Source of the DNA: Ruditapes philippinarum
Lineage: Eukaryota
Direction of reading: 5' to 3'
Assembly (NCBI RefSeq): GCF_026571515.1
Contig: NW_026861601.1
Coordinates: 62,001 to 126,000 of the forward strand
Length of the DNA stretch: 64,000 nucleotides
Under the pieces are notes generated by a model. It searched no databases. It worked only from the letters and a program-made list of their open reading frames with translations, and was not told the DNA's origin. The translations under genes were made by a program, and so were the position numbers. Positions 4,499 through 61,790 of this stretch are shown here, in pieces. Position 1 is the first letter of the stretch, and each line of letters begins with the position of its first letter.

Positions 4499-4546
4499 AT
4501 GAGTGAAGGAGAGAATGTTAAAGTGGCTGTCAGGGTGCGACCATTC
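4499..4546 (+). CDS. KIF28: Kinesin exon 1 [16 protein letters not shown]
   Basis: ATG 4499; kinesin beta1 motif; followed by U12 donor ATATCCTTT. Confidence 0.93.
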
Positions 4547-19500: not shown

Positions 19501-22500
19501 CCCTTAGATACGGTAAGTCTTATATCTGACATTGCAATATAGGCATTTTACCTCTTATTAAAGGAACTCTTCTGAGGTCTGAAAACTCTAAAAGCATAAA
19601 ATTTGAGTTTCGTTAATAGATCAGCTGGGTCACTTTAAAACAGAAAGATAGAAATATACTCAGAAATAAATTGAAAATCATATTTTTGTGCTATTCATCG
19701 CCAGATTTGAGTACAAAAGTGTTGCAATACTTATTTTTTACTTGAAAATCGGAGTGAGCAAATTTGAAATTTTGCAGACAAGTTATTGGTCTAGACCTAC
19801 ATTGAAAGAAACATTTAAATCCAGGAAAATTATTTCCAGTCTAGCCATGTCAAAAAACCTCAGTGGAGTCCCTTTAAGTTTTAAGATCCTCGTATAAAGT
19901 GTATTGTTCTTACCTACAAAAATATATTTCCAAAGACTATATTATGTAGGAAAATTATTTTTTTGAGATACCTAGGTGTCTTTTTAATATAGAACAGAAC
20001 ATACACTTTATTATGCCCCCATTTCGAAGAAAAGGGGGTATATTGCTTTGCACTTGTCGGTCCGTCGGTCCGTTGGTCCGTCGGTCCGTAGACCAAATGG
20101 TTTCCGAGTGATAACTAAAGAACCCTTAGGCCTAGGAACTTCAAACTTGGTATGGTGATTGGTCATGACCAGTAGATGACCCCTATTGATTTTGGGGTCA
20201 AGGGGTCAAAGGTCAAGGTCACATTGACCTTGTAAGCAAAAACGGTTTCCGATCAATAACTAAAGAGCCTTAAGGCCTAGGAACTTCAAACTTGATATGG
20301 TGATTGGTCATGATCAGTAGATGATCCCTATTGATTTTGGGGTCAAGGGGTCAAAGGTCAAGGTCACATTGACTTTGTAAGCAAAAACGGTTTCCGATCA
20401 ATAACTTAAGAACTTTAAGGCTTAGGAACTTCAAACTTGGTATGGTGATTGGTCATGATCAGTAGATGACCCCTATTGATTTTGGGGTCAAGGGGTCAAA
20501 GGTCAAGGTCACATTGACCTTGTAAGCAATAATGGTTTCCGATCAATAACTAAAGAACTTTAAGGCCTAGGAACTTCAAACTTGGTATGGTCATTGGTCA
20601 TGATCAGTAGATGACCCCTATTGATTTTAGGGTCAAGGGGTCAAAGGTCAAGGTCACATTGACCTCTTGGGTAAAAACGGTTTCTGATCAATAACAAAAG
20701 AACCCTTAGGCCTAGGAACTTCAAACTTGGTATGGTGATTGGCATGACCAGCAGATAACCCCTATTGATTTTGGGGTTAATGGGTCAAAGGTCAAGGTCA
20801 CATTGACCTTGTAGGTAAAAACGATTTCCGATCAATAACGAAAGAACCCTTAGGCCTAGGAACTTCAAACATGGTATGGTGATTGGTCATGACCAGCAGA
20901 TGACCCCTATTGATTTGGGGTTAAGGGGTCAAAGGTCAAGGTCACATTGATTTTGTAGGTAAAAACGGTTTCCGATCAATAACTAAAGAACCCTTATGCC
21001 TAGGAACTTCAAACTTGGTATGGTGATTGGTCATGACCAGCAGATGACCCCTTTTGATTTTGGGGTTAAGGGGTCAAAGGTCAAGGTCACATTGACCTTG
21101 TAGGTAAAAACGGTTTCCGATCAATAACGAAAGAACCCTTAGGCCTAGGGACTTCAAACTTGATATGGTGATTGGTCATGATCAGTAGATGACCCCTATT
21201 GACTTTGTTGGTCAAGGGGTCAAAGGTCAAGGTCACATTGACCTCTTAGGTAAAAATGGTTTCCGATCAATAACTAAAGAACCCTTAGGCCTAGGAACTT
21301 CAAACTTGGTATGATTATTGGTCATGACCAGTAGATGACCCCTATTGATATTGGGGTTAAGGGGTCAAAGGGCAAGGTCACATTGACCTTGTAGGTAAAA
21401 ATGCTTTCAAATCAATAACTTAAGAACCCTTTGGCCTAGGAACTTCAAACATGGTATGGTGATTGGTCATGACCAGCAGATGACCTATTGATTTTGGGGT
21501 CAAGGGGTCAAAGGTCAAGGTCACATTGACCTTGTATGTTAAAAACGGTTTCCGATCAATTAACTAAAAACGCTTAGGCCTAGGAACTTCAAACTTTGTA
21601 TGATGATTGGTCGTGACCAGCAGATGACCCCTATTGAGTTTTGGGTCAAGGGGTCAAAGGTTAAGGTCATGACCAGTAGATACTTGATAACCCTTATTAA
21701 TTGTTTGATCACTGGGTCAGAAGTCATAATAACCTTATCACATGACTAATTGGCTGCTGATAGGGGGCATACATGTTTTACAAACATATCTTGTTACTTT
21801 TAGAAATGAGCCAGCATGATAATAATCAAATGGTCAAAATACATTAAATATACAATGTTATTGTTCATTGATATGTTGATCATAGAGACATGTATTTGTA
21901 TTATGTCTTGAATTATTGAAATGAACAAAGCAAAATTCACTAGTTGAACTAGACAATAACCATATAACTTTTTATGCCCCCGGGCATATAGTAATTGAAC
22001 CTTCCGTCAGTCCGAGCAGACGAGAGCTACATTATGAGGTTTAGGTTTATGTACAGGCACTCTGTATGGGGTTCATTCCGTAGAGACATGTATTATGTGG
22101 TTAAAAATGCTCTTATGGGGTTAAAAAAATTTGCTCTTGTGGGGTTAAGAGATCAAAGGAATAACCCCACAAACACGTCTGCTAAGTAAGTCCGTCCGTC
22201 TGTCCGTCTGAGGTTAACCTAGAACGGCAAGTTGGATTTTTCTTAAGTTCTACCTGTACCAATGGCTTCTAAGTTTACACACTTACTAATCAATACAAAG
22301 TACATGATCTGGGCAAGTTACATAACTCTGGCTTTCATATTTACCAAGTTATTGCCCTTTTCAGCACTTAGAAAATGAATAATGGTTAACCTAAAACGGC
22401 AAGTTGGAAATATCTTAAGTTCTATCTATACTAATGACTTTATAATTTCCACACTTACTTATCAATACAAAGTACATGATATTGCCAAGTTATATAAATG

Positions 22501-25500
22501 TGTCATCCATATTTCCCAGTTATTTCCCTTTTTTCACTTTGAAAATAGGGCCTTGTCTGGTTAACCTATTTCGGCAAGTTGGATTTATCTTAAATTTCTC
22601 CTAATTGCTTAATTTGTTTAATGATATCTTTCATATTTAGTAGGTGGATACCTTTGATGGTCCTCTAATTTTTTGTGGAGTTAGCGGTCTCTAGGGTCAA
22701 GGTCAAGGTCACTGGTCACTGGTTTAAAAAATAAATATAAACATTTTTGCTCATACAGCCTTTATTTTTTAGTTGATGTCTTAGTTTAATACAAACATGC
22801 CAAGGGAGGTCCTCCTTCTTTGGGTGTAGTAAGGGGTCATTTGGGTCAAGGTCAATGTTACCACTGTCAAGGTCACCAATGTTAAAAATAGATTTTTACA
22901 TTTTTACAGGTGTATTGACCTTATTCTATAGACAGATGTTATTTATAATTGATAGAAACATAAACTTTGATGAAGTTAGTGGTCAGTTGGGTCAAGGTCA
23001 CCAGTGCTAAAAATAGATTTTTACACATTTGCTCATACAGCCTTTATTAAGTGACAGATATATTTTATATTTGGTAGGAAGATAACTTGCATGGTATTCA
23101 TCCTTTTGATTGGGGTACGGATCAGTGGGTCAAGGTCACTTGTGCTAAAAATAGATTTTTACACTTTTGCCCATACAGCTTTTATTTATTGATAGATGTA
23201 TTTCATATTTGGTAGGAAGATAACTTGCATGGTATTCTTCCTTTGGATGGAGTAAGGGGTCAGTTTGGTCAAGGTCACCACTGCTAAAAATAGATTTTTA
23301 CACTTTTGCCCATACAGCCTTTATTTATTGACAGATGTATTTCATATTTGGTAGGAAGATAACTTACATGGTATTCTTCTTTTAGATAGAGATAGGGGTC
23401 AGTTTGGTCAAGGTCACCAGTGCTCAAAGTCGATTTTAAACTTTTGCCCATACAGCCTTTATTTAATGACAGATGTATTTCATATTTGGTAGGAAGATAA
23501 CTTGCATGAAGTTAAATATTTTTCAACTTCACAAGTCAGAGCAATGACTTGGCAACTTATATTTTTTTACAATTACAAAATCCCATGACTTTGTCAAGCT
23601 AAGCTATATAACTTGTGTTTACAATTTTTTGGCAATTTTTCTGTCCATAACTGAGTGAATGGGTAAACATTTTTTGAAATATTGCTACTGACAAGAATCT
23701 GAGCCGGGGGCATTTGTGTTTAACAAACACGTTCTTGTTTATAATAATAATACAACTAAAAATACAGTAGTAGATATTCTAATCTACTTATTATTGAAAT
23801 AATATGATATCATTTATCTACAGCTGATCGTGCCAAGCAGATTAAATGTTCTGCCAAGGTTAACGAGGATCCGACTGCCGCACTGATCCGAGAACTGCAA
23901 GAAGAAAACGAAAAGCTCAAGCAGATGTTGGCAACAGGCAAAGTGGACGTGTCTCTCATGGAAGGGGACGATACTGCTGACATGACTGATGAAGGTTTGT
24001 TTTTATATAGATTATCTCCCCTTCAAATAACAATTATGAACTAATCAGAAAGGCTCTATACAGGAAATGGCTGTTTATTTTTACCTTCATCATCTTTTAT
24101 GTTTTATAAGGTTCATCTCTTTAGCAACAACTTGCAATATTGTTTTGCTGAATAACATCAAACAATTCTTGCAGTACCATTTTCCTTTGCAAATACCCAG
24201 TGACGGGCATTTTCTATGCCTTTTATACAGATTTTGGTTTTTTACATAACTTTTTTATTATTTACTTGATATGTATGTATTTCCTTCAATGATTTGAGTA
24301 TGGCAATTGAAAGAATACGATATAAATGTTAAAATGAAATTTTTTAGAGAGAGCCGCCATGAAGAACGAGCTGAAAGAAGAATATGAGAGTATGTTAGAG
24401 AAGAACAAGAAGGACATGGACAATATGGAAGCTGAATTCCAGAAACGTCTCGAGGAAGCCAAGCTCACGGTAAGTTATTTAAACAACATGGAGAGGTGGC
24501 CTATTGACTAAAGTGTATACCTTTTAACTAGAGGATACTTATGTTGATGTGCAGTAAAACCAAACAAAATAAAGAAACAAATATATATTTAATACAAGTA
24601 CTGGTGAGTTCCAGGAGGCAGGCTTGAGAAAGGGTTAATTATGGTTAAATCGAAGTGTCTGGCTTTCATCCTTTCAAACTTTATCTGAACCACTACTGAC
24701 TTTACTTATAGGCCTTTGAGCACAATTGTTAAGGTTATGACTTTCAATTATTATTTTTCCAACTTTATTGTGGCTTGTTTTTCAAGAGCACATTGAATTA
24801 TTTTGTGTGAGGAAACTATTCATCCAGCTTATGGGGAGGTTAACCATAATACCTAGATGTCTGTAACCTTCCTTCTAAATGCATGAAGGAGCTTAATATT
24901 CCCCATGATAATCTTCATCTTATAATGCTAATTTAAGTTTGACCATGCGAGGGAACTGGTAATATTCTTATTCCATTACTATGAAAGTTTCTTGTTTAAC
25001 TATTTTATCAAGAGTTGTATGTATCATAATATTATTATAGAGTGACTATGGATCTATAGCTGAGATTAATGAGAAGAAGAAGAAGCACCCACATTTGTAT
25101 AACTTGAACATGGACCCACAGATGACTGGTAAAATTATACATTTTATCATCGAGGATGACTGTACAATCATAGGAAACGGGAAGGGTGAAGGAACCGACC
25201 TCACTCTAAGAGGTGGCAGGTAAGGGTCGGTCACATTGGTTAATTGATGTTTCATGTTTAACTACTTGATGTTTTATGTTACACTAATTAATGTCTGCAC
25301 AAAGAGAAAAGATAGTAATGAGTACCTTTTGCAGGGTCAGGGTTAAACTTGCCGATATCAATTCAATTTGCACCCATGGGTATGGGTTCGAATCCTGCAA
25401 GGACAGTTTAATTATTTTATGTTGGAAACTTACTCTGCTAGTGTATTAAAAGGTTGATTTATAACTGTGTAATTAGCCAATCCTGTAATTATATAAATAG

Positions 25501-28500
25501 AAAGAATCTGAGGCCATCAGGCAATCAGGTCACCTCACTTAAGGTGGAAATTTACGTTGTGACACTGTTTTGCCATTTTGACTAAATAGACAGTCTCCAG
25601 AACCTAATAAAAAATATTTTTAATGAATGACATTTATTTTTTTACAGCATCATTGATATTCACTGTAAGATCAACCATAAAGATGGTGTGTTCACACTGG
25701 AGACATTCCCGAACGCTCGTACATTACGTAACGGTAAAGCCGTCACAAATGAGACCAAAACACTGAAACATCATGACCGTTTGGTGTTCGGTACAACCCA
25801 GTTTTTTGTGTTCGCAAATCCCTTGGATACCTCTGGATGCAAAGTAGAAGAACCGACATTTGAAATGGCCCAGGCAGAGATTGCCACGAAATCTGGTGGA
25901 TTTGACATGTCTGGTGCAAACAAATCCAGAGGTTAGTCAAACTATATACCCATGTAAAGCTGTTGTCTTGCTCTGTGCAGAGATCAAATCTTTCATCCAA
26001 TATATATAGATCACAATTGTTTATTCCAGGATTAATAATATCTGTCATATGTTGCGTTGGGCGGGTTCCCGAGGGACAGATATACCGATCCAAACCGCAA
26101 ACATATGTTAGATATTTTTTCTTGCATATTCTGCCATATTATTTCATATTTAAAATGGTTTACCTCAATATGATATATGTTCATGGAAATTAAAGTCATT
26201 TCATCCATAACTATTTTCTTACAATAGCGTATGAACTTACAACTTAAATAACAACGGCGAGATGACGTCATCCTAAGCACATATTTCTCTTCTAAAACGA
26301 CGTCATTTTAAAGCGGTTCATTCAAAAAGTGCGCTAAAATGACGTTGTTTGGCACGCGACTCATCTGGCACCCCCCCATGCCAGAGGAAATTTTCGGCAT
26401 GGGTAAAACTCACGGAAACGCCAGTCTGCTATGCAAGAGTAATCCATCTTATCTAAATGATATAATAATGTATAAACCTAGAATGAATTAGATCTTGAGC
26501 CTGGTTGCTACAAATTAGATTTTGACCCTGGATCTAATTGATGTACTTTGTATGAATTAGATTTTGACCATGTATCTAATTGTTTGATAAAAGATAATTA
26601 TATAAAAATGAAAGTTAAATATAATTTTTTATGTACACCTTTAATTGCAATAAATGTAATATAGCATTTTGTATTAATATAAAAGTTATTTATGACACAA
26701 TGCCAGGACAATGTTCATTCTTTACTGATTGATTTCAGAGGAGGCCCTTCTTCAGCAAGAGTTACTGGAGATCATGCCAGCTGTTGAGGAAGCAAACAGT
26801 GTATCAGAGGCTCTTGGTAAAAAGAAGAGATTTGATCTGATGATTGTATCTCCCGAGGCTCGAGGGGAGTTAAATGGCAGAACAGAGGTTAGTCAGGATG
26901 TCTTCATAGCAAAAAACAAGTCATTTGGTGGCTGGGTTGGGATGGGAGTAAACTGGTAGACAGGAAACAGGTCCATTGGATGGCAGGGTTGGGATGGGAG
27001 TAAAATGATAGACAGGAAACAGGGTCATTTGGTGGCAGGGTTGGGATGGGAGTAAACTGGTAGACAGGAAACAGGTCCATTGAATGGCAGGGTTTGGATG
27101 GGAGTAAAATGAGAGACAGGAGAGGTCCATTGGGTGGCATGATTGGGATGGGAGTAAACTGGTAGACAGGAAACAGGTCCATTGGATGGCAGGGTTGGGA
27201 TGGGAGTAAACTGGTAGACAGGAAACAGGGCCATTGGATGGCAGGGTTGGGATGGGAGTAAACTGGTAGACAGGAAACAGGGCCATTGGATGGCAGGGTT
27301 GGGATGGGAGTAAACTGGTAGACCGGAAACAGGTCCATTGGATGGCAGGGTTGGGATGGGAGTAAACTGGTAGACAGGAAACAGGTCCATTGAATGGCAG
27401 GGTTTGGATGGGAGTAAAATGAGAGACAGGAGAGGTCCATTGGGTGGCATGATTGGGATGGGAGTAAAATGAGAGACAGGAAACAGGGCCATTGGATGGC
27501 AGGGTTAAGAAAGAAGTAAAATGGTAGGGACAGAGAACAGGTCCAAAGTTGATTCAAAGCCCCACAAACCACAGGTTTTTTGTTTGCCAGTGAACTTCAC
27601 TTGGACTAGATTTATAGTACATAGAAGTCAGTAAAGTCAAAGGAACAGCTTATCATGTATTAATGAGAAATAGCATGTGACTTTTACATCAAGATGTGTA
27701 ACCTAAGTTATGTGAAATAATTCAGCTATCAATACCTTTACTGAATTCATGCATTCACACAAATTTCTCAAAAACATGAAACCAATGCTACATTTTGAAA
27801 AAGTAAATGATTTAACAATATCAAAAACTTAAATATCATTTATTATTTTCCCCATGCTGATGTTAAGATATTTCATTGACATTTTCTCGTATAGATATAC
27901 ATGTATCTTATCAGTTATGAATGAAAATTGTGATAGTTTTCAGTTAGTTACTTTAACTATAACAATGAACATTGCTTCCTGGTTGCTAGGTAACAATTTT
28001 GGTTTCTATGGTTACAGGTGATGGTGAAGATGACATGCACAGACACAAAGCATGAATGGATTTGGGATAGAAACAAATTTATTGACAGAAAATGCATTAT
28101 GTCTGAAATGATGGACAAGTATGAAGATGGGCTTGAATGGCAAGTTCCACAGGTATGAAACTTACTTAAATGAGTAACTACAGCCAAAGAAATTTAATTT
28201 AAAGCACTATATTTATTCTAAAGTTTTATATTTAACCCAAAGAATTGAAGAGCAAGCCAAAGATTTAGGGCTTGAAAATAATAAGACATTTCAAAGCATT
28301 GCCTTGATTCCTCAAATGATTATCTCTGTTTGCTTACATCTTAAATCTTTAAACAATATAATATATGAAAGTAATTTGAATTATTTATTAAATTTACAAA
28401 TTTTTATTTGTTGTTTGATGTATTTCAGGATAAAGATCCATTTTATGATGATCCCAAAGCAGATTTCCACATTGGCAGTGTTAAAATGTGGTTACAATCT

Positions 28501-31500
28501 GTGTCCTATATGGTAAGAGCTTGGTCAATTATCTTCTTAGTGTATATCCCTTACTGAAAATGTCACATTTTAATCTCTGAGTGTTGACATTGTCTTACAT
28601 AAGTGGAAAAGAATTCTAAAGTACTTTTCCTAGAAGCATCTTAGCAAGAAATCTTCATGGACAAGTGATGCAAAGCCAGTTTCTGCTTTCTTCCAAGAGA
28701 ATTCCATTGAAAATATTTCATTCTCTACAGATTTGAGATAAGAAATATTGTACTGATGTGAGACCAGAAATATTGCCAGAGAGACTGTATCATAGCTTTT
28801 TAAAGCTCATGCTGTTGTGTTTAAAGCTTAATGAATACATTGTATTAATTTATAATCAGCAAGACTTTAGTCATGTTTTCCTTTGCCTTCCAATGCTCAG
28901 TCAAATGAATTAATAAAGATTAATTAACCACCAGCAAGGAGGCAAATTTACTCACCAGGTTATGTGATATTGGTGGAAATTGGTTTCAAACTTGTTTGCT
29001 TGTATTTCAGATTGAGTCCAATGAAACTCTAGATGTCACAGATTTTAAAGGTTCCCCTGTTGGCAAAATGAGTGTAAGTATTTAAGAGCTTTTTGATTCT
29101 ATTAATCATTCATTACCAAGACCTTTATAATTATAGTAAATTGATGTTGAAACAATATTTTGCTATAAGTATATTTTATTGTTTTATCTAGAACTTTATA
29201 AAGCTCATCAAAAATATAGTTTTACAGTTAGAAGCATACAACAAAATGTGTTGTAGAGTCTTAATTATGTTTGTTTAAATAGCATTTCATAAAACATGGT
29301 GTGGAGTGGAGTTGTAAAGAGCTTTCTGTTGATACTCATTAAACAAAGTATTAATTTGTAACAAACTAAACTTTCAATAGTTTATAAATAATTTGAGTTA
29401 GTGTCATTGTTTAAATTTATTATCTCCCCTTATCAGATTGGTGTTTTCCCATGTGATCCTAAAGGAAAGGAATTCACAGAAAAGGATGATAAATTTGTTG
29501 AAGATCCAAATGCTCTTGTTGGCAAGAATATTGACTTTAAGGTGAAGATTGTCAATGCAAGAGGACTACCAAACAAATATACAGTAAGTTTGGAGTAAAT
29601 TTGAGAATTTATTGCGAGAAAAAAAGTTTTCTTTCTTGACAAATTATCGTTTTTCTTGTTGTTGTTTAATAATTTGGATATAATTGTTGTTAACATTCAA
29701 AATCAGAGAAGTAATTGATTATATATTAAAAAGAAAAAGTATGCACTTGTGATGAAGGATGTATTTTCCATGTCATTTCAAGCATATTGGCACATTGCCA
29801 GTAGGCCAGAAAAGTAAAAACAGGTGCAATTATGACTTGAGAAAAATACTGTGTGACATTGCAGAGGGGCCCTCTGTATTGTAAATACCTCTTTTCAACA
29901 ACAGTATCAGTTTTTTCCTAAAGTTAGATTGAGAACAAATGCAATATCTCTAGATCATAGTTTCAGCTATGTCTCCCAAGGGTGTTGCTTTGTTGAGGTT
30001 GTACTGTAGGTTTTAGTCAGTATGGCAGCATTAAAGAAACTCCAGTAATGTCCAAAAGCCTAAAAGCTAAAAAATTTATTTTCTTGCATAGATCAGCTGG
30101 GGCACTTAAAACAGAAATACATGCAAATGATAGTTAAGAAATATACCAGGTTCCCAGTATAAATTGAAAATGGTATTTTTGTTAACCTTCTTAGTTCAAT
30201 TCACTTTTCAATTTTTGGTCATTTGTCAAAATTTGAATAATTATTCTGGAAAATGGAATGAACGAGCAACGATTTGAAATTTTGCACACATGTTTTTGGT
30301 CTAGATCTACATCAAATGGAAACATTAATCTCCAAAAAATATTTTTAGGCCCGTCATTTCAAAAAAACTTGGTGGAGTTCCTTTAATAACATGGTGTTTT
30401 ATTGGTCTGACTTGTGGCTTTGGCATTACTCTGTTGTAGTAACAGACAAGAAAGTCATATGACCATACGAGCACATGCAATTTGACCAGCCTTCATACTT
30501 ATGTCTGAAATACTTTATCATGATAACGACCAGTTTTAAAAGGGATGTCCAACAACTTTATTAAGGTAATTTAGCAGGTTAGTATTTTAATGAAAGCAAA
30601 AGTGCCCAGTCTGCCTTGAGTAAAAAAGCATATCACCAGTTGTAGCTATTATATATGTAATATATAAACTATTATATAATTTTTTTTTCAGGATGTCTAC
30701 TGTAAATATAAAGTTTATTTGGAAGACAAATTCACACAGACCAAAGCTATCAAAGATACAACTAACCCGGATTTTAATCATGAAAGAGTGGTCTCCATGC
30801 AAGGAACTCAAGAGGTAAAAACAAATTCTTCAAAAGAAATGAAGGAAACCAAAGTTCATTTCTTTTATTTGATTTTTTACTAAGAGATTTCATTACAGTG
30901 GCTTCTAATTAAAATGTTCTGGTCATGTATTTTACAATTTTAGGAATGTAATATTGGCACATAATTTATAGTTGTGAAAGGGATATTAATCAATTTTGTT
31001 GCAATGAATTTTACCATCAGTATAGTTACCATAGGCTAGCGGCCTTGTGGAAGTGTGCCTGCCATGACTGTGTCATGATTGGGTCTGATCCTTGGCTAGG
31101 TTTTGTTACACAATCTCTAGAGTGGGGAATTTTTAAGAGGGGAGAGATTGTGTAGTGATAGTGTTTGTCTCTCAACCAGTACTGGTTAGTTCCAGGAAGT
31201 GAACTTGAATATGGTTCAAATAAGTTTAAAGCTTTCATGATAATCATTCTAGAATAAATATGTGAATGTTATAGAATAAATACATGAATGTTGAAATTGT
31301 ACTAGTACCTGCTTCTGTTAAAGGGTTAATAAGGTTGAGTTTCAAGTCATTCCTGTGTTTTCAAAAATTTGAGAAGATAGCCTGTCATAAATTTTGTAAA
31401 TTAATGCATATATAGCATGGTATATTAATTAAACAGCACTACAAAAATGGCACTTCTACAAATCATTCCTGAGGCATGCACATTGCAGAATAGGCATATA

Positions 31501-34500
31501 GCAGGTAAAGTTAAAGTCATCCTAAGTTCCAGTGATGATTGTTTGACCTGTCATGACAAACTCGGTAGATTTTATATTTAGAGATGCTAAGATTCCACAG
31601 CATATGCAAATCTCCAGTTATGTCTTTGTAATAAAATGTATTTGATTTTTTTTTTCAGAATGTAGATTTTTTGAAGACAGGTGCATTTATTGTACAAATC
31701 TGGGGTAAACAGAAAGATCAAAAACCAAAGGCAGGTAACAAACTCAAGATGGCTGCTGCAGGAGGACAAGGTTTACATGTGGTTAACACAAACCAACAGG
31801 TGAGTAACTGTAGTATCTTAGTCAGTGATTGCACTGAGTAATGATTAAAGAAATACTATGCTCATCTTCGGGTATAATCATTTTATTGCAGAAATGTATA
31901 GAAATCTTGTATATTCTTCCTGAGTATGACTTATCTTAATAAGTGAATGTATGAACTATGCTTTGGAAGCTGCATTTTGTATAACTTGTCAATTTAATTT
32001 GGTGTTTTCTTATAAAAACTGCCAGTTTTTTAATGACACTATGTAATCACACTGTGATTACCTGTAGTGTGAAGAGTTTAAAATGTAACATATTTATTAT
32101 GTGTGTTCAAAGATGGTGTTTTTTTTTTTTCAAATATAAAAATTTAATTTGAGCATTATCTGGCATTATCTTTACCAAAGTCAAAGATTTTTTATTACAA
32201 TTTTCGGAAAAGGTTTTGGTATCTTATACTAATAAATAAAGCTTATAAGGGTGCTATGATTAAGTGCTTAAGGTCATTGCCCGGAATCACTTGTCCCTAA
32301 ATTACTGATTTGGGTTTGAAACACATCAGAAAAGACATACATTGTACATGTGGCACATTTTACTTATAAAGATAGTTTTATTTATTACGTTTCATCTTGC
32401 AGAGATTTGATCCAGAAAAGGTGAAATACATGATGGAAGTCACTGCATTGAAAAAGAGACAAGAAAAAATGGAGCATAAACTTGTGAGTTTATTATAATG
32501 TATCTATAATTGCGATAATTTATTGTAATAAATAATTTCTTACTTTACTTGAAAATAGGAAAATAAGTGAATTTTAGTTTCCCTGTAAAATTGTATTATC
32601 AAATGTTAATTATCTAATTGTATGTAGACATGGGACATAATATAACAGCTCTCTATGAAACACTATATTACAAGCTCACTTTGTAACACTATATTATAAG
32701 CTCACTATGTAACACTATATTATAAGCTCACTATGTAACACTTTATTACAAGCTCACTATGTAACACTATATTAAAAGATCACTATGAAACACTATATTA
32801 GAAGCTCAATATGAAATAATATATTACAAGCTCACTATGTGACACTATATTACAAGCTCACTATGAAACACTATATTACAAGATCACTATGAAACACTAT
32901 ATTACAAACTCACTATGAAACACTATATTACAAACTCACTATGAAACACTATATTACAAGTTCACTTTGTAACACTGTATTACAAACTCACTATGAAACA
33001 CTATATTACAAACTCACTATGAAACACTATATTACAAGTTCACTTTGTAACACTATATTACAAACTCACTATGAAACACTATATTACAAACTCACTATGA
33101 AACACTATATTACAAGTTCACTATGTAACACTATATTACAAACTCACTATGAAACACTATATTACAAGCTCACTATGTAACACTATATTACAAGCTCACT
33201 ATGTAACACTATATTACAAGCTCACTATGTAACACTATATTACAAGCTCACTATGAAACACTATATTACAAGCTCACTATGAAACACTATATTACAAGCT
33301 CACTATGAAACACTATATTACAAGCTCACTATGAAACACTATATTACAAGCTTGCTATGATTGTAACACTATATTACAAACTCACTATGAAACACTATAT
33401 TACAAACTCACTATGAAACACTATATTACAGGTTCACTATGTAACACTGTATTAAAAGCTCACTATGAAATACTATATTACAAACTCAATATGAAACACT
33501 ATATTACAAACTCACTATGAAACACTATATTACAAGTTCACTATGTAACACTGTATTAAAAGCTCACTATGAAACACTATATTACAAGCTCACTATGTAA
33601 CACTATATTACAGACCCACATGAGAAAAATGATTGAGGTAGCTGAGGAGCATCAGAAACGTAAAGTATCAACAAAGTTGATCAAGGACATTTACAATGCA
33701 CCTACCAATGACCAGGCCGAGAAGTGTATAGCTCTTATACCTCTGGAGAAAGGTAGGAAACAGTGGTAGGTGTCACACCAGCCAACCTCGTGCTACCAAA
33801 CTAGAATTGATTACAATATTTTAACAAAACAAATTTTGTTAGACTTGTTGACAAATCTCATGATGGAGTAGAAAAGGGATTTTTTCGGTCTTCCAACATT
33901 AAAACTTATACTTTACCATATTTATAGTGCACAGACAGTCCCGCCGGGATTCAGGTTCAAATCATTTTTGGGACATTTGATTTCTTCACGTAAGCAAGCT
34001 ATCTGGGGTGGGCTAGATGATAGAAAGTCAGTTGCGATATTCGGTGCTTGCAAGTGCCTTACATACAATGTAGTGCCATATGACCTGTACAGTTTTGGTT
34101 TGACTTTAAAGAAAAAAAGATATTAATAATATCTGTTACATGTTAAGGTTTGGATTGGAAAATCAGACAACTTTATTTAAGTAATCTAGCAGCCATGTAA
34201 TGTATTGATGAAATCAAAACTGCCCAGTCAGTGTGTGAAATTATCTTCCAAATATATTTTAATATTTACGTCATGAAATTTCTAGCATGGGTAAAACTAA
34301 TGGACACACCACTGTGATATGTAAGAAATTTAGATCTATAACAATACTGACTTGGGGAAAAATAATTACAAAATATCATTAGAAGTGGAAAAAATAAGCA
34401 ATAAGAGTTCTAGATTGGTAGCATGAGTGTTTCCAAGCATGTCTATAGTGAGTTACATGCATTGGAAAGTTTTAATCTCTTATTTTTATATTTAAGAAAA

Positions 34501-35339
34501 AAAAATCTGTAGAGCTGGTAGGCCTACCAATCAAATTTCAATATTTTTACTATTTCTCCAACAAAATAATTATACAAAATTGTACATTGGACTGATGTTT
34601 CAGCTGAATGATCAAACCTACAAGAGTGATAAACATTAATAAGATAGTACAATAGCAGTATTAGAAATTGAATTGATGAATTTTTTAGAATTAAGAAAAT
34701 GAAATATTTATGACAAGCAATATGTTAAACATTCATTTATTTTGATAACTCTGACTTAAAAAGTGATAACTCTGGCTTAAAAAGTGATAACTCTGATTTT
34801 AAAAGTGATAACTCTGATTTAAAAATGATAAAGCTGAAACTTAAAAATTGATAACTCTGAAACTTAAAAAGTGAGAACTCTGGCTTGAAAAGTGAGTACT
34901 CTGATTTAAAAAATAATTACTCTGACTTAACAAGCTGCTATTATGTGGTTAACATATTTCAATTTTTTCTTGGTATTGACTTTTAGATTAAAAATCAATT
35001 TTTATTATTGAGAAATATTTCTGGTTTAGATTCGGATGATGAAGATGGTGACGGGGGAGGAGATTGCTGAAACAATAAGGAAACCAATTGGCTCTGGTTC
35101 CCCCTAATAAACAAGACAAACAAGATACACAAGGAACCGATGGTAAGAAAAAACATAAGAGATCAGGATCAAAATCTTCTCACAGCTCTAGCTCCAGCAG
35201 CAGCTCTTCAGATTCCTCCGATGACGAGAAAAAGAAGGCAAAAGGCAAAGAAAAGAAAGTATCACCTAAACACAGTGCGCAGAAACAAAAACGTCCTTCA
35301 AGTCCCAAGAAGAAATCAAGTGCTTGTGTACTTCTTTAA
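4499..35339 (+). CDS. KIF28: Kinesin-3 family motor, KIF28/KLP-6-like (whole gene, 23 coding exons; 973 aa if it ends at TGA 35068-35070, about 1046 aa if the CaaX tail ending 35339 is reached)
   Basis: The exons join in one frame with matching phases: KVAVRVRPF|[15 protein letters not shown]-loop [14 protein letters not shown], switch I NATSSRAH, switch [36 protein letters not shown], neck VNEDP, FHA ([11 protein letters not shown]...HHDRLVFG), C2-like (NARGLP...TNPDFNHE). The subfamily is assigned from remembered family features. Confidence 0.9.
4547..7636 (+). other. U12-type (minor spliceosome) AT-AC intron, 3090 nt, phase 0
   Basis: 5' site ATATCCTTT at 4547, branch TTCCTTAAC at 7618-7626, 3' site CAC at 7634-7636. 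Removing it joins RVRPF to NGREK in frame. Confidence 0.95.
7076..7293. mobile_element. Non-autonomous TIR element with 8-bp TSD (hAT/P-like MITE), copy 1
   Basis: Ends CATATAAGTGAACT / AGTTCAAATGTATG; flanks CCCATACC / CCAATACC. Confidence 0.8.
7637..7843 (+). CDS. KIF28: Kinesin exon 2 [15 protein letters not shown]...[12 protein letters not shown]...KFADQ
   Basis: Kinesin-3 motif FDFSYWSH; GT donor at 7844. Confidence 0.95.
8312..8444 (+). CDS. KIF28: Kinesin exon 3 with P-loop ([17 protein letters not shown])
   Basis: AG/GT bounded; Walker A. Confidence 0.96.
9201..9280 (+). CDS. KIF28: Kinesin exon 4 ([11 protein letters not shown]...QFE)
   Basis: ttttccccag/gtgaga; phase 1-0. Confidence 0.93.
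9662..9869. mobile_element. Same MITE family, copy 2, inverted relative to copy 1 and inserted in an older MITE
   Basis: Perfect 14-bp TIR CATACATGTGAACT; perfect 8-bp TSD CCTGGAAA (9654-9661, 9870-9877). Confidence 0.9.
10158..10269 (+). CDS. KIF28: Kinesin exon 5 ([17 protein letters not shown]...RQHPKSGFY)
   Basis: LEIYNE motif; cag/gtaagt. Confidence 0.95.
11161..11272 (+). CDS. KIF28: Kinesin exon 6 (...[17 protein letters not shown])
   Basis: First half of switch I; cag/gtaaac. Confidence 0.95.
11527..11758. mobile_element. Palindromic MITE with ~95-bp arms; a right-half copy lies at ~16430-16535
   Basis: TGAGC...GACCAGCATGGATCCAGACCAG / CTGGTCTGGATCCATGCTGGTC...GCTCA flanked by TA (or ATAT). 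Confidence 0.85.
12975..13150. repeat. ~58-bp tandem repeat, 3 copies
   Basis: GGTCATTT..AAATACAATT....GATATTTTGATT repeated. Confidence 0.75.
17153..18070 (+). mobile_element. Helentron-associated (HINE/DINE-like) element with ~4.8 internal 164-bp tandem monomers
   Basis: Subterminal IRs GCTCGACTATTC / GAATAGTCGAGC, (GGCGTC)n microsatellite, 3' hairpin GCTGTC-n5-GACAGC, end TCTTGTT in a T-run; monomers at 17228, 17392, 17557, 17721, 17885. Confidence 0.85.
18282..18389 (+). CDS. KIF28: Kinesin exon 7 (RAHTIV...VNLVDLAGS)
   Basis: Switch I end and switch II. Confidence 0.95.
18758..18959 (+). CDS. KIF28: Kinesin exon 8 ([27 protein letters not shown]...[10 protein letters not shown])
   Basis: Conserved L11-alpha4-L12-alpha5 region. 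Confidence 0.96.
19452..19512 (+). CDS. KIF28: Kinesin exon 9 ([20 protein letters not shown])
   Basis: alpha6 motif; tag/gtaagt. Confidence 0.95.
19562..19873 (+). mobile_element. Kolobok-like MITE (TTAA TSD, AGG...CCT ends)
   Basis: TTAA|AGGAACTCTTCTGAGG ... CCTCAGTGGAGTCCCT|TTAA. Confidence 0.75.
20011..21795 (+). mobile_element. HINE-like element with ~11 tandem 145-bp monomers
   Basis: TATGCCCCC / GGGGGCATA subterminal IRs, (GGTCCGTC)n, 3' hairpin ATGTTT-TAC-AAACAT, end TCTTGTT; monomers at 20099, 20244, 20389, 20534... Confidence 0.88.
21972..23739 (+). mobile_element. HINE-like element with two kinds of internal repeats and a nested insert
   Basis: ATGCCCCCGG / CCGGGGGCAT IRs, (GTCC)n, hairpin GTGTTT-AAC-AAACAC, end TCTTGTT. 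Confidence 0.8.
22015..22183. mobile_element. Small TIR element nested in the HINE microsatellite
   Basis: AGCAGACG...CGTCTGCT; near-duplicated flanks GTCAGTCCG / GTAAGTCCG. Confidence 0.6.
23824..23994 (+). CDS. KIF28: Kinesin exon 10 (ADRAKQIK...[21 protein letters not shown]...)
   Basis: Motor end and kinesin-3 neck coil. Confidence 0.95.
24348..24469 (+). CDS. KIF28: Kinesin exon 11 (coiled coil [12 protein letters not shown]...LEEAKLT)
   Basis: tttttag/gtaagt; frame consistent. Confidence 0.9.
25041..25219 (+). CDS. KIF28: Kinesin exon 12 ([15 protein letters not shown]..., start of FHA)
   Basis: PHLxNLNxDP motif of kinesin-3. Confidence 0.93.
25648..25931 (+). CDS. KIF28: Kinesin exon 13 (FHA: RNGKAV...[10 protein letters not shown]...FEMAQAEIA)
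   Basis: FHA motifs; overlaps ORF 25688. Confidence 0.94.
26739..26887 (+). CDS. KIF28: Kinesin exon 14 ([29 protein letters not shown]...GRTE)
   Basis: EANxxSxxLxK kinesin-3 motif. Confidence 0.93.
26912..27545. repeat. G-rich 52-bp minisatellite, about 12 copies
   Basis: Unit GGGTTGGGATGGGAGTAAACTGGTAGACAGGAAACAGGTCCATTGGATGGCA. Confidence 0.95.
28018..28152 (+). CDS. KIF28: Kinesin exon 15 (VMVKM...[18 protein letters not shown]...)
   Basis: WxxxKFxxR..MxEM kinesin-associated motif. Confidence 0.92.
28429..28512 (+). CDS. KIF28: Kinesin exon 16 (DKDPFYDDP...[14 protein letters not shown])
   Basis: DPF motif; cag/gtaaga. Confidence 0.92.
29011..29073 (+). CDS. KIF28: Kinesin exon 17 ([21 protein letters not shown])
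   Basis: tttcag/gtaagt; phase 0-0. Confidence 0.88.
29437..29583 (+). CDS. KIF28: Kinesin exon 18 ([10 protein letters not shown]...FVEDP...[10 protein letters not shown])
   Basis: Start of C2-like domain. Confidence 0.92.
30035..30382 (+). mobile_element. Second Kolobok-like MITE of the same family
   Basis: TTAA|AGAAACTCCA ... TGGAGTTCCT|TTAA; shares ATAGATCAGCTGGG and GGTCTAGA blocks with the copy at 19562. Confidence 0.72.
30692..30814 (+). CDS. KIF28: Kinesin exon 19 (DVYCKYKVY...TTNPDFNHE...)
   Basis: C2-like motifs. Confidence 0.92.
31659..31799 (+). CDS. KIF28: Kinesin exon 20 ([18 protein letters not shown]...)
   Basis: End of C2-like domain; cag/gtgagt. Confidence 0.9.
32403..32483 (+). 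CDS. KIF28: Kinesin exon 21 ([27 protein letters not shown])
   Basis: cag/gtgagt; coiled-coil-like. Confidence 0.87.
32648..33613. repeat. 26-bp minisatellite, about 37 copies
   Basis: Unit CTCACTATG(A/T)AACACTATATTACAA(G/A). Confidence 0.96.
33614..33752 (+). CDS. KIF28: Kinesin exon 22 ([15 protein letters not shown]...IPLEK)
   Basis: The acceptor is the end of the 26-bp minisatellite; donor G|GTAGGA. Confidence 0.85.
34744..34930. repeat. 21-23-bp minisatellite, about 9 copies
   Basis: GATAACTCTGACTTAAAAAGT variants. Confidence 0.85.
35030..35339 (+). CDS. KIF28: Kinesin terminal exon region: [13 protein letters not shown] (35030-35070) plus an out-of-frame Ser/Lys-rich tail ending [10 protein letters not shown] (open 35079-35339)
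   Basis: Acceptor tttag at 35029; purine-rich coding-like composition; CaaX immediately before TAA. How the frames connect is unresolved. Confidence 0.7.
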
Positions 35340-38300
35340 GTTTAATTCCATAATTATTTTCTGTTCATCTTCTTGATGATGAAGTTTTTGTCTAAAATTA
35401 AAATACGGAATATATTTTTCATTGTTATAAGAATAATTCACTTTAGTCTTAAAATGATATGTAACTGATAGAAACATATCTTTGTTTATTCTTTATTGAC
35501 CACTTAAATTTAACTTTTAAAGCTTTGGGGTTGTTTTTAGATATTTGACTTTAATTTATCAATGGTGAATCTTAGATTTTTGCTCCAATGTTATTTACTT
35601 TTACAAATAAACAGTCTTACGGTTCTTGTTATGTCTTGTTGACGAAATCTTGTTGGTTGTGTTATTTTGTATATAAAACTTTAGATAGTGACCTTATGGG
35701 GTAATTATACTCAAACTGTATCAGACATTAATTTAAAATGCTTTGTTGTGCGATGAAAATGAACTTGAATCATACGAAATGGAACAGATGTATATGTGAA
35801 ATATGAACAGATAGATACATTTTGTGCTGATTGTACATGTATGTCTGACCTTAAATTATAATTGTTGACCTTTTTGCTTTTGTTGTATAGTAAAATATTT
35901 TTGCGGTTATATTTTTATGTAGATAATTACAATTTGTCCTTAAAATCATTCCGTCCAGTGAATTATGTGTCAGTATTTTAAGTATGAAATTAGTGATTTT
36001 GTTATTTCATTGTGTTTTTCTTATAATTATAAATGTAAATATTTCCTAAATTATCTTTATATATACATATATATGTATCAGGTTGTAGGTGTGAAACCAT
36101 TTTAATTTTATATGAAATACCGTGAAATTTGGAACTGTCTGTAATTCGGCCTTATCAGTGCAGGTATAATGACGCAGACTTATCAAGATTATGTTCATCC
36201 AATTAGGAAAATGTGCATCATAATTTCTGCACTTCAATATAATAACAGTGATGTTTCTCTTTAATATACTGAAACAAGATATTGATCACTGAGTTCTAGG
36301 TATGCTTTTCCTATTGTTTTAAGGCTAATTTGAGAACTACACACATTTTTTTCTTCGCTTTTTGAATATCGATACTATAGTTTCAAATAGTATTTGCGAG
36401 CATGTCCCTTAATTGTACTTAGTATCTTCTATTTGGACCACACATAGTTCTACATACATAAATATATTAATGTACCGTATGTGTCACCATTTCACTCATG
36501 TAGTTTAATATAACCTTCAGAAACCATGTTAAATCATATGATGTCATCATCTATTTATAGCAATGTTTATTTTTAGCTCAAGTTTACACATAATATAACA
36601 TATTCCTTATATGTTCTGTGTACTCAGATGTCATGCAATACTAAAAATGATCTTCATTGATTTATACATGTTTTTTTGTGCTCAATATTTCTTTTTTCGT
36701 TGAAAATGAAAAAAAAAATCTAATATGGTTAGAAAAATTTAGATATGAAATATAATACCTTTATATGCAAAGCATAATAGAAGAGGTGAAGTTGTATTAC
36801 CTTGTATTATCCCCTTTTTCCAATATATATTATTTAAAGGGACATTACTGCTGTGTTATTCTGGAATGTTTACTGCCATATTTGTACCCATGATGACATA
36901 ATCTTTTTTTTATGCACTTGAAAATTGTTGACATTTGTGAACTGTTTTAGCAGAGATGTAGAAAGTGCTTTATGTTTTATCATCAGCCTAAATGATCAAG
37001 TGAGACTGACTACCTTATGTAGTCATGTGAAAGACACATTTAGTCAAATTGACTATCAAGGTAGTCATTGGTCCAACTACTATGTTATATAAATAAACAT
37101 TCTCATTTTAACTGAAAATTTATTAACCAATTAAGTAGGTAGTCATATTCGAATTTGAGAAAAGGCTAATAACAAATAAGGTAGCCATATGCTAATTTAA
37201 GAACACATGATCAATTAAGTAGTCATGTGTTAAATAAAGATCTGGTAGTCATGTGTTATATAAGATCCAGGATAGATTACACATACAGATAAAATGTTGG
37301 GGGATTAAACTTTCCCCTGAGAAATGTAATAAAAATGACGGTAAAATATAAATTAATATATAAGTTATAAATTTATAAAATTATCTATAAACATAAGTAA
37401 ATTTTATAGCCAATATTAACATAGTATTAAATGTGTGGTTTCTTTGTATTCTTCCTTTTCATCTAGTATTTAATCAGACAAAATAATGGTGAAAACCATT
37501 CTCTTGAAGCGAAAACTGTGATACGGAAATGTATAACACTAATAGCTATTCAATTCTCATATAATCTTTCTTGAAAAATTAATCAGAATCTATTAAAATG
37601 AAAAATTAGTAGTAAATCTGTAGTATTAATTCACTTATATCAATCACATGTAGTAAAATTGATTAAGTAAAAGTAGTAAAATTGATTAACCAGTAGTAAA
37701 ATTGATTCAAATATAAATTAATTAATATAATTATGGATTAATTGATTGATTAACCTCACTTTGGAAGCATTTTCTGTGATACAAATAGATAATATATGTA
37801 AAGTTAGGTCAATATAATAATGCATAGTGCTAGACTATAATTTAGCTCTAAACTTTTGAAATTTGCTGACTCGGCAATTTTCAAGCTCATGGGCAATTTC
37901 TGTGATAAAATATACATGAAATATATATATTTCTTCTTATATGTAAAGCACTAGTTAAAATTTAAACAACTTGTATTCTTAGGGAAACTCAAATAGTGGT
38001 TTGATAAAGTTTTCAGTCTGTTTTTTGAAACAAAATGTATTTGAATAACATTTTTTTTCAAGCTCTAGAAGCCGAATCTGTGATATTTAAGGCGCTGTGA
38101 TACATGTGGTTGCAGGTGTTCAGTTCGGCTTGATTTCTTACATTTTACAGGCTTAGAAGTGAAAATGAACCAATTTGCCATGTGCTTTGATTGCAGCAGT
38201 GCTACATTGCCCTGGCTCATTGTTTTTGCAATGCAGACTCCTTAAAAATGTGATTGAAGGACAATTGTTATTTTTTAGGGGTTTAAGGGGTGCATGGATT

Positions 38301-41300: not shown

Positions 41301-42719
41301 ATAATTTCAAGTGCACAAAGGGACCTGGGTAATATTTGACTTTTTCATAAGTATCATATTAGATCAATACTGTAAGAACTTGTTCCAAGTATATTTAACA
41401 AAATAATAATCAAGACCAGCCACACTCTACTGTCCTCTCATTGGTTGATTTCTAACGTGAGCTCAGCCAATCAGAGCGCCTCTAGCTTGAGACTGGTTTA
41501 GTGAACAAGTTTTTTTATTCAGTATTTAAGACTTGATATGACTTATAAAAGTTTGTTTGTGCACATTCCTTTCTCCATACTTTGCCTGTAAAAATTGTGA
41601 ATAAATTTTGTGAACCAGTATAATTAAGTTCTTGTATCACACTGCTTATGTGCATAAGACACAAATTACTGGTATTTAATATGTTCTCTTTTGTCATATA
41701 TATATTTATCAGTATCTTACTACTTACTCATATTTTAAATATTTTTGTGATTGATTGTTTTATTTAGTATGTACTATCAACAAATCTAGACAACTTGATT
41801 CTAAATGATCAAGAGGATATTTAATGTGAGATCTAAAATAGACAAGGATTAAAGTTAATGTGATGATTCTAAAAATAGTCTTGGATAGAAGTTAATGTGA
41901 TGATTCTTAAAATAGACTTGGAGATAAGTTAAGACAATCATTCTAAAAACAGATCTTAGGAAACAAGTATTATTCTATAAATAGAATTTGGCTTACATCA
42001 GGTGGTATTAAATAAAACATCGCAAATTTGTAGAAAATTGATTTTTAAATTAGGAAAACAAGTTACAATACTGGTTTATGATTGAAAAAGAAATAGTTTT
42101 TGATCAAAACTTGCTATTTGATTATTTCATGAAGACTTAGATAAGTTTGTATTATTATTATTACTATTTAATATTTTCTTTTCAATTTTTGATTTAATTT
42201 GTTTTTTTCTAATCTACATAAGATTGGTTGAAGTTTAACTTAGGCACAACATTTATGTATCTGCACATTAAGCTGAACAGCACTTGAGTACAAAAAAAAC
42301 TTTTTTTGAAAATTATTTTTGTAAAACATTTTATATTTTTTTTTAAAAGATCTATTTCCTTTTTTCAGTATTATATTTTGTACCAACTGGTTCAATCATG
42401 TGGAAACAGTATTTTATTTTGTAGTTAATTAAGAGAATTGTGTGTCTTAAAACTTTTTATAGAAATATATTATATATGGTATTAATTATCATGTTCAAGC
42501 TATGGAAATGCATTAGAATTCATACATCTGAACCATGGAATAAATATGGGTAAAACCATAGCATAATTGAAATAGAATTACGATGTGTTATTAGCTCAAA
42601 AAATGTTGAAAATTACATCCAGAATAAACCTTTCTTTTGTAATATTGAGTTATCTTTCTTTTTCATCCTTAAGGTATAGAAATAACACGCCTTTTAATGC
42701 CCAGATTAAGTCATGGTTC

Positions 42720-55046: not shown

Positions 55047-61666
<6,620 letters not shown>

Positions 61667-61790
61667 CTGTAAAAACAAAAATAAATGACATTATTCTATA
61701 GTGTATGTGTATTCTAGGCTTAATAAGGGCCCATCCACCCTTTCAGGCACTGAGAGTATGAACCCCCCCCCCCCCTTATACTATTCTTAA

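What the first reader, a model, noticed from the sequence alone, without database searches (positions are those of the whole stretch)
35030..35339. Kinesin last exon stops early, with a protein-like CaaX tail stranded in another frame
Seen: exon 22 (phase 1) spliced to 35030 reads [13 protein letters not shown] then TGA (35068). A second frame, open only from 35079 after TAA 35076, encodes about 86 aa ending [13 protein letters not shown]. The other 2.9 kb of CDS has no frame break, and no single indel connects the two frames. Inference, routes that would connect them: (a) alternative AAG acceptors at 35079, 35115, 35124 or 35133, all in phase with exon 22 but with little or no pyrimidine tract; (b) an 18-nt micro-exon 35030-35047 plus a 68-86-nt GT-AG intron from 35048 with CTAAT at 35104; (c) recoding; (d) two homopolymer errors (G5 at 35053, C5 at 35100), which would give [21 protein letters not shown]. 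If real, this is an on/off switch for lipid anchoring of a motor.
Basis: partly seen in the sequence, partly recalled or inferred. Interest (0 to 1): 0.8.

Follow-up and report, generated by a model that had tools for sequence, protein, structure and literature searches.

The report
Clam KIF28 kinesin lipid-anchor tail
The early stop in this clam kinesin gene comes from five surplus letters in the assembly; the real messenger RNA reads straight through to a lipid-anchor signal (CVLL) that most animal KIF28 kinesins share, and a nearby alternative splice site makes a version without it.

Summary
Exon 22 (33614-33752, phase 1) spliced to 35030 reads [16 protein letters not shown], and an 86-codon frame from 35079 ends [13 protein letters not shown].

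The frame break is not biology. Spliced RNA contigs from two studies join 33752|35030 and lack five window letters (35065; 35070-71; 35079; 35088 or 35090). A third RNA run and a DNA run show the same shorter sequence. No run shows the window's form. Without those letters the exon is one frame of 101 codons ending CVLL.

The gene is the Manila clam KIF28/KLP-6 kinesin-3. Its tail aligns with those of Mercenaria and Mactra. Of 200 long relatives, from ctenophores to echinoderms, 158 end in CxxX.

One run also uses a donor 13 nt downstream (GT at 33766), giving ...LEKGRKQ-stop. This is the RefSeq clam protein. Long and short isoform pairs exist in Mercenaria, Physella, Liolophura and Eriocheir.

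The scan noted the CVLL end before (s1-810672), on this same stretch. No paper found links KIF28 to prenylation.

The parts
4499..35339 (+). KIF28/KLP-6-type kinesin-3 gene, 23 coding exons (Manila clam orthologue)
   Evidence: tblastn of RefSeq Ruditapes philippinarum KIF28P (P0129) onto the window gives about 100% identity exon by exon. Pfam finds Kinesin and FHA on single exons.
33614..33752 (+). Exon 22, reading THMRKMIEV...CIALIPLEK plus the first base (G) of the next codon
   Evidence: Sequence read. RNA contigs of X3, X6 and X7 cover 33614-33750/52. It is identical to P0129.
33753..33765 (+). 13-nt extension of exon 22 used when the downstream donor (GT at 33766-67) is chosen. It reads G-R-K-Q, and its last two bases TG plus A at 35030 make a TGA stop. 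This gives the tail-less isoform.
   Evidence: X3 joint 33765|35030 with GT..AG ends, depth 16.4 against 8.9 for the canonical joint. Translation. RefSeq P0129, Mercenaria X2 (P0128), P0124 and P0137 end ...LEKGRKQ.
33753..35029 (+). Last intron (GT..AG, phase 1). It holds a 21-bp x 9 tandem repeat (34743-34934) and a high-copy repeat near 34240-34330.
   Evidence: Joint 33752|35030 in X3, X6 and X7, with zero RNA depth inside the intron except at the repeat. Tandem repeats.
35030..35339 (+). Coding part of the last exon. In the reads it is one frame of 101 codons (acidic stretch, Ser-rich, Lys-rich, CVLL) followed by TAA.
   Evidence: X6 record 17 spans 33614-33750 and 35028-35440; X7 record 21 spans the joint to 35127. 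A script translated the window after dropping the five letters. Alignment to the tails of Mactra P0131 and Mercenaria P0317.
35065..35090 (+). Faulty stretch of the window, with five surplus letters in four places (35065 T; 35070-71 AA; 35079 G; 35088 T or 35090 G). This is a probable assembly consensus error.
   Evidence: table 4 lists the letters left out in X6 and X7. Table 7 shows loose ends after 35064 and before 35091 in X1 (DNA) and X3 that carry the shorter form. The X1 bin depths mean zero cover of the window form over 35065-35090, while its flanks are identical.
35068..35070 (+). False stop codon TGA, created by the surplus T at 35065
35079..35336 (+). The 'stranded' 86-codon frame, which is the true reading frame of the tail from about 35091 onward
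   Evidence: All substitutions seen here in RNA alleles (35090, 35093, 35094, 35306) are synonymous in this frame, while the 3'UTR just after the stop is dense with differences.
35307..35336 (+). Polybasic patch plus CaaX box: [10 protein letters not shown] (Cys codon at 35325-27)
   Evidence: Sequence. Cdc42-prenyl carries the same box, KKSRR-CVLL, and is a GGTase-I substrate (PMC9868626). 158 of 200 relatives end in CxxX.
35340..35700 (+). 3'UTR, which runs beyond 35700 and is highly polymorphic between runs
   Evidence: RNA contigs continue to 35700 and past it. AATAAA at 35606.

Best explanation
The window carries the Manila clam (Ruditapes philippinarum, or a very close relative) orthologue of the kinesin-3 motor KIF28/KLP-6. 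In the animal, the last exon is one continuous reading frame. After ...LIPLEK it encodes about 101 residues: an acidic stretch, a Ser-rich run, a Lys-rich run, and the end [10 protein letters not shown]. This is a polybasic CaaX box of the geranylgeranyl type. The early TGA and the 'stranded' frame arise because the assembled sequence has five surplus letters in four places between 35065 and 35090, each lengthening a short run. This is most likely a consensus error at a heterozygous spot.

The anchor is switched on and off by splicing at the donor side. Donor GT 33753 gives the CaaX isoform (about 1061 aa). Donor GT 33766, 13 nt downstream, gives ...LEKGRKQ, with a TGA formed across the junction (964 aa, no tail).

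Shown: the splice joints, the shorter sequence in reads, conservation of the tail and of CaaX, and isoform pairs in other species. Inferred: that the Cys is actually prenylated, and that this tethers the motor to membranes.
For: Reads:
- X6 and X7 RNA contigs join 33752|35030 and lack 1+2+1+1 window letters at 35065, 35070, 35079 and 35088/90.
- X1 DNA and X3 RNA show the same shorter form as loose ends after 35064 and before 35091.
- X1 has zero depth on the window form, yet 0 differences over 34663-35064 and 35091-35158, and 1 over 35129-35700.
- Removing 5 nt moves the spliced frame into the CVLL frame.
- Allele differences inside the tail are all synonymous in that frame. The exon 22 difference at 33667 is synonymous too.

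Orthologues:
- Mercenaria X1 reads DSDDEDGGGDGGGDGGKPIALVPP...KKSSACVLL.
- Mactra reads DTDDEGEGGGSKPVGVIPPSKQ...KKSSACVLL.
- 158 of 200 relatives of at least 850 aa end in CxxX, against a Cys frequency of 0.9%.

Switch:
- X3 has a second joint, 33765|35030.
- RefSeq P0129 ends GRKQ.
- Same-species long/short pairs diverge at this point in Mercenaria, Physella, Liolophura and Eriocheir, at the same alignment column.

Family: Pfam Kinesin and FHA; source names KIF28/KIF28P/KLP-6; orthologue P0005 matches the KLP-6 structure 7wrg at E 2e-222.
Against: - All reads were Logan contigs, which drop rare variants. Absence of the window form in four runs is therefore not proof that no animal carries it.
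- X1 differs from the window in part of the intron (34455-34568), so it may not be the assembled individual.
- The alternative donor was seen in one contig of one run, with only 23 letters on the shorter side.
- No experiment shows prenylation of any KIF28.
- The nematode relatives found here lack CaaX, and vertebrate tails were not retrieved.
Confidence: 0.85

Rival explanations
1. The window shows a real but rare haplotype of the sequenced clam: a natural frameshift allele that truncates the tail after DGDGGGDC and so mimics the tail-less isoform.
For: Bivalves are extremely polymorphic; the UTR haplotypes differ at 5-8% of sites. Contigs cannot prove absence. A tail-less protein is made normally by splicing, so such an allele could be tolerated. 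X1 is not identical to the window everywhere (34455-34568).
Against: It needs four separate insertions within 26 nt and no substitutions, on a haplotype whose flanks are letter-perfect in X1. None of four runs from four studies has it. All other variation in the tail is synonymous, which indicates purifying selection. Each surplus letter lengthens a short run, the usual signature of long-read consensus error.
Confidence: 0.12
2. The window sequence is right, and the two frames are joined by RNA processing or recoding: an alternative AG acceptor at 35079/35115/35124/35133, an 18-nt micro-exon plus a short intron, or ribosomal frameshifting.
For: The acceptors are in phase with exon 22. A CTAAT branch-like motif lies at 35104.
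Against: Only two joints were found, and both use the acceptor at 35028-29. RNA contigs run uninterrupted from 35030 to 35440. The segment these routes would skip (DADNKKPIALVPP) is conserved in Mercenaria and Mactra. The RNA itself carries the shorter sequence, so no recoding is needed.
Confidence: 0.02
3. The CVLL frame is untranslated 3'UTR that happens to be open, and the protein truly ends at TGA 35068.
For: The window as assembled stops there. Pfam gives only a weak low-complexity match for the tail (SR-25, E 0.002).
Against: P(open by chance) is about 6e-4. The tail is homologous to tails of other bivalves down to KKSSACVLL. Only synonymous variation is seen in it, and polymorphism rises sharply right after TAA 35337.
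Confidence: 0.01

Closest known systems
C. elegans KLP-6 / rat KLP6 (KIF28P), kinesin-3 subfamily
   Same: Motor, FHA and a C-terminal region that aligns to the MBS and MATH-type domains. Orthologue P0005 aligns to the full-length KLP-6 structure 7wrg over residues 4-851 (E 2e-222). Sources name the relatives KIF28/KIF28P/KLP-6.
   Different: The KLP-6 papers read here describe no lipid anchor and tag the C-terminus with GFP (PMC9314371, PMC10945585). The nematode relatives retrieved lack CaaX. The clam protein adds a disordered tail of about 100 aa ending in CVLL.
Farnesylated kinesins: CENP-E (kinesin-7) and Trypanosoma brucei KinesinCaaX
   Same: A kinesin with a C-terminal CaaX box. KinesinCaaX (CVIM) was shown to be farnesylated (PMC3206815).
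   Different: They belong to other kinesin families. X = M gives farnesyl, whereas the clam box is CVLL (geranylgeranyl type). PMC3206815 states that its kinesin is restricted to kinetoplastids. Here the box spans most animal phyla within kinesin-3.
Cdc42-prenyl C-terminus (KKSRR-CVLL)
   Same: The identical CaaX box CVLL, preceded by a basic patch. Leu at X directs GGTase-I (PMC9868626). The two Cdc42 splice variants also differ in their lipid signal.
   Different: Cdc42 is a small GTPase regulated by GDI, not a motor. In the clam tail the basic patch is KKK, followed by SSA.
INF2-CAAX / INF2-nonCAAX splice isoforms
   Same: Alternative splicing at the 3' end decides whether the protein carries a prenylated CaaX box and sits on a membrane (PMC3237625; PMC8077471).
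   Different: INF2 is a formin. The clam switch is an alternative 5' splice site 13 nt apart that creates a stop across the junction. The INF2 splicing mechanism was not examined here.

Membership tests
Kinesin-3, KIF28/KLP-6 subfamily | N-terminal kinesin motor domain | tested here: met
   Pfam PF00225 on exons 8264-8452 (E 2.9e-12) and 18663-18974 (E 5.1e-26).
Kinesin-3, KIF28/KLP-6 subfamily | FHA domain after the neck | tested here: met
   PF00498 on exon 25631-25933 (21.1 bits against a cut-off of 20.7). phmmer of this exon finds KIF28 proteins first.
Kinesin-3, KIF28/KLP-6 subfamily | Whole-length orthology to named KIF28/KLP-6 proteins, including the C-terminal region that aligns to the MBS and MATH-type domains | tested here: met
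   RefSeq R. philippinarum KIF28P maps onto 22 window exons at about 100%. Orthologue P0005 aligns to KLP-6 7wrg residues 35-859.
CaaX prenylation substrates (GGTase-I type) | Cys at position -4, aliphatic a1 and a2, and X = Leu at the very C-terminus | tested here: met
   C-V-L-L followed by TAA at 35325-35339. Same box as Cdc42-prenyl.
CaaX prenylation substrates (GGTase-I type) | The box is in frame with, and translated as the end of, the protein | tested here: met
   Met in RNA contigs of X6 and X7, and in the shorter form seen in X1 and X3 (translation). Not met in the window sequence as assembled.
CaaX prenylation substrates (GGTase-I type) | Conservation of the box among orthologues | tested here: met
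   158 of 200 relatives of at least 850 aa end in CxxX (X = Q 77, L 51, M 21). Most of the rest are short isoforms or truncated models.
CaaX prenylation substrates (GGTase-I type) | Covalent isoprenoid on the Cys, -aaX cleavage and carboxymethylation | not testable with these tools
   Needs metabolic labelling or mass spectrometry.
Splice-switched lipid anchors (INF2, Cdc42 type) | Two mRNA isoforms of one gene, one ending in CaaX and one not | tested here: met
   X3 holds both joints, 33752|35030 and 33765|35030. The RefSeq clam protein is the short form. Same-species pairs exist in four other species. In the clam the short form rests on one contig.
Programmed ribosomal frameshift / recoding | The mRNA carries the two frames as in the genome, and the ribosome shifts between them | tested here: not met
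   The mRNA contigs do not carry the two-frame arrangement; they are 5 nt shorter and in one frame.

The most novel reading that the evidence does not exclude
KIF28/KLP-6 kinesin-3 motors are ancestrally lipid-anchored. A C-terminal CaaX box (Leu, Met or Gln at X) is kept from ctenophores, placozoans, sponges and cnidarians through to molluscs, arthropods, echinoderms and amphioxus. It would be the family's missing cargo-binding module, standing where KIF1A has a PH domain and KIF16B a PX domain. In molluscs and crustaceans a conserved alternative 5' splice site at the last, phase-1 intron makes an anchor-less isoform. None of the papers found here mentions this.
Probability: 0.5. Interest if true: 0.75.

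Novelty: new member of a known kind. Interest (0 to 1): 0.5.

Why it matters
For the assembly, a five-letter error hides the long isoform. The RefSeq clam entry found here (XP_060555492.1) is the tail-less form only, while the neighbouring genus Mercenaria has both forms annotated.

For biology, how KIF28/KLP-6 binds cargo is open. The structure and motility papers read here invoke unknown cargo adaptors or 'other factors' for activation, and they tag the C-terminus. A covalent prenyl anchor, conserved across most animal phyla and removable by splicing, would give a direct and easily tested answer. It would also add a third kinesin family to the short list of prenylated motors.

Tried and rejected
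- Second copy or haplotig in the same genome that might hold the correct form: there is only one match, the window itself.
- Pfam on the tail: only a weak low-complexity match to SR-25, so not informative.
I could not check whether the RefSeq assembly is the same as the window or compare another assembly.
- Tanaka et al. 2011 on rat KLP6 is not held.
- Three word searches listed no vertebrate KIF28, and the alignment to KLP-6 stops before its C-terminus. Whether vertebrate and C. elegans proteins carry CaaX stays open.
- Literature searches for KIF28/KLP-6 together with CaaX or prenylation found no paper making the link. Subscription journals are not covered.
The joined protein was never sent to a search tool.
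- The big representative search was used because exon-sized queries cannot reach full-length kin in the word search.
- No structure prediction was run: the tail is low-complexity and presumably disordered.
Full report
**1. Observation**

- Exon 22 runs 33614-33752, starts in phase 0 and ends one base into a codon (G). The donor is GT at 33753 and the acceptor AG at 35028-29.
- G plus the exon from 35030 reads [13 protein letters not shown], then TGA at 35068-70.
- A different frame is open over 35079-35336 and ends [10 protein letters not shown], with TAA at 35337-39.
- The two open stretches do not overlap, so one indel cannot join them.
- The 86-codon frame is not a chance event. P is about 6e-4 with the local composition, and the tail is 41% G+C against 27-30% in the intron and downstream.

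**2. What the reads say**

One search found 20 runs that hold the exon. I laid four of them on 33610-35700: X1 (DNA) and X3, X6 and X7. All four are Logan contigs, from four studies.

X3, X6 and X7 are RNA. They have no depth in the intron apart from a repeat near 34240-34330, and they carry GT..AG joints.

Contigs X6 record 17 and X7 record 21 run from exon 22 across the joint 33752|35030 and on into the last exon. Relative to the window they lack:
- one letter at 35065;
- two letters at 35070;
- one letter at 35079;
- one letter at 35090 (X6) or 35088 (X7).

There are no gaps at G5 (35053-57) or C5 (35100-04).

X1 and X3 show the same shorter sequence as loose ends after 35064 and before 35091. 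The X1 bin depths (5.52 and 7.08) are exactly what is expected if its contigs stop at 35064 and resume at 35091. The window's form therefore has zero cover in X1. Yet X1 matches the window with 0 differences over 34663-35064 and 35091-35158, and 1 over 35129-35700. By contrast, the RNA runs carry second haplotype contigs in the 3'UTR that differ from the window at 5-8% of sites.

A haplotype that is letter-perfect on both sides but differs by four run-lengthening insertions within 26 nt looks like a consensus error, probably at a heterozygous spot. The alleles differ at 35088-35094, and the contigs break there. A real private allele cannot be excluded from contigs alone.

**3. Consequence**

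Five fewer letters move the spliced frame into the CVLL frame. A script that dropped those five window letters gives 101 codons after ...LEK: [12 protein letters not shown], then ADNKKPI (from the reads), then ALVPPNKQ...[10 protein letters not shown] and stop.

The allele differences inside this frame are all synonymous:
- ATT/ATC at 35088-90;
- GCT>GCA at 35093;
- CTG>TTG at 35094;
- CCC>CCA at 35306.

The exon 22 difference at 33667 is synonymous as well. Differences become dense immediately after the TAA. That is the pattern expected of translated sequence under selection.

**4. Identity**

Pfam finds Kinesin and FHA on single exons. phmmer with the FHA exon alone (window:25649-25930), followed by three word searches seeded with hits, brought about 220 relatives. 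Their sources name them KIF28, KIF28P or KLP-6.

RefSeq Ruditapes philippinarum KIF28P (P0129, XP_060555492.1, 964 aa) maps on the window at about 100% in 22 exons, up to 33763.

Orthologue P0005 aligns to the full-length C. elegans KLP-6 structure 7wrg (E 2e-222).

The joined protein was not sent to any search.

**5. The tail is conserved**

- Mercenaria isoform X1 continues after ...LIPLEK with DSDDEDGGGDGGGDGGKPIALVPP... and ends KKSSACVLL.
- Mactra reads DTDDEGEGGGSKPVGVIPPSKQ...KKSSACVLL.
- Across the family, 158 of 200 proteins of at least 850 aa end in C-x-x-X, with X = Q (77), L (51) or M (21). Cys makes up 0.9% of residues.
- The taxa include ctenophores, placozoans, sponges, cnidarians, molluscs, annelids, nemerteans, brachiopods, a priapulid, a flatworm, chelicerates, crustaceans, echinoderms, hemichordates, amphioxus and tunicates.
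- Nematode hits lack the box. Vertebrate proteins were not retrieved.

**6. The real switch**

X3 also holds a second joint, 33765|35030 with GT..AG ends, at depth 16.4 against 8.9 for the canonical joint. It uses a donor 13 nt downstream. The frame then reads G-R-K-Q, and TG plus A forms a TGA across the junction. Because the stop sits at the last junction, nonsense-mediated decay is not expected (established rule; inference here).

This is exactly the end of the RefSeq clam protein and of Mercenaria X2, P0124 and P0137.

Cluster look-ups gave same-species pairs:

| Species | Short isoform ends | Long isoform tail |
|---|---|---|
| Mercenaria | GRKQ | 178 aa ending CVLL |
| Physella | GKPR | 101 aa ending CILL |
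| Liolophura (chiton) | GK | 44 aa ending CVLL |
| Eriocheir (crab) | GNND | 23 aa ending CQLL |

In each short form, Gly follows the shared sequence. This is what reading G|GT into the intron gives. In molluscs the divergence falls in the same alignment column.

In the clam itself it rests on one contig of one run plus the RefSeq model.

**7. Mechanism**

Inferred from established CaaX rules and from PMC9868626: CVLL with Leu at X is the box of Cdc42-prenyl (KKSRR-CVLL), a GGTase-I substrate.

The clam end [10 protein letters not shown] should therefore be geranylgeranylated, trimmed and methylated. Together with the basic patch, this should hold the motor on acidic membranes. The long acidic and Ser/Lys-rich linker would act as a flexible tether. 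The GRKQ isoform would be soluble or adaptor-dependent.

None of this was tested.

**8. Known or new**

- Prenylated kinesins are known: CENP-E and T. brucei KinesinCaaX (PMC3206815).
- Splice-switched CaaX boxes are known: INF2 (PMC3237625) and Cdc42 (PMC9868626).
- Searches of the paper library found nothing linking KIF28/KLP-6 to CaaX or prenylation. The KLP-6 structure and motility papers speak of unknown cargo adaptors or other factors, and they tag the C-terminus.
- Subscription journals are not covered, so prior description cannot be ruled out.

**9. Limits**

- All reads were contigs, and only one laying call was allowed.
- Tanaka et al. 2011 is not held.
- Only one copy of the exon exists in the assembly.

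Noticed in passing
window 32640-33612: A 26-bp minisatellite of about 37 copies (90% matches) fills the end of intron 21 and runs right up to the acceptor of exon 22. I kept it out of the stretch laid with reads.
   Followed up: partly
window 34743-34934: A 21-bp tandem repeat of about 9 copies lies inside the last intron. X1 DNA matches it with no difference.
   Followed up: no
window 34240-34330: A short high-copy repeat in the last intron has depth 145 in the DNA run against about 5-8 around it. It is also present in all three RNA runs, with loose ends on both sides, so it is probably a transposon fragment expressed elsewhere.
   Followed up: no
window 35340-35540: The 3'UTR exists as two sharply different haplotype contigs in X3 and X7 (6-10 differences per about 120 nt, plus 1-nt indels at 35384 and 35505). 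The coding tail just upstream shows only synonymous changes.
   Followed up: partly
RefSeq XP_060555492.1 (P0129) against window 33614-35339: The only R. philippinarum protein of this gene in the collection is the short GRKQ isoform (cluster of one member). Mercenaria has both the long and short forms annotated. The five surplus letters may be why no long isoform was annotated in the clam.
   Followed up: partly
proteins P0157-P0177, P0227-P0313: There is a second KIF28 paralogue clade, which includes a second R. philippinarum protein, P0175. It ends almost invariably ...S-x-A-C-[TSV]-[ILV]-Q, a farnesyl-type box with Gln at X. Deuterostome members of the first clade end C-x-[IVL]-M.
   Followed up: partly
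window about 55050-61700, minus strand: Exon-like open frames of a cyclin-dependent-kinase-type protein kinase ([10 protein letters not shown]...DFGLAR; ...[13 protein letters not shown]) mark the neighbouring gene on the opposite strand.
   Followed up: no
window 42700-43700 and 26900-27600: Long tandem or degenerate repeats give spurious open frames of 200-290 codons on both strands (IQTITVTC... and [21 protein letters not shown]...). The second lies in a kinesin intron.
   Followed up: no
tblastn places exon 1 at 4499-4546 and exon 2 from 7637, which fits those borders. The splice-site type was not checked.
   Followed up: no
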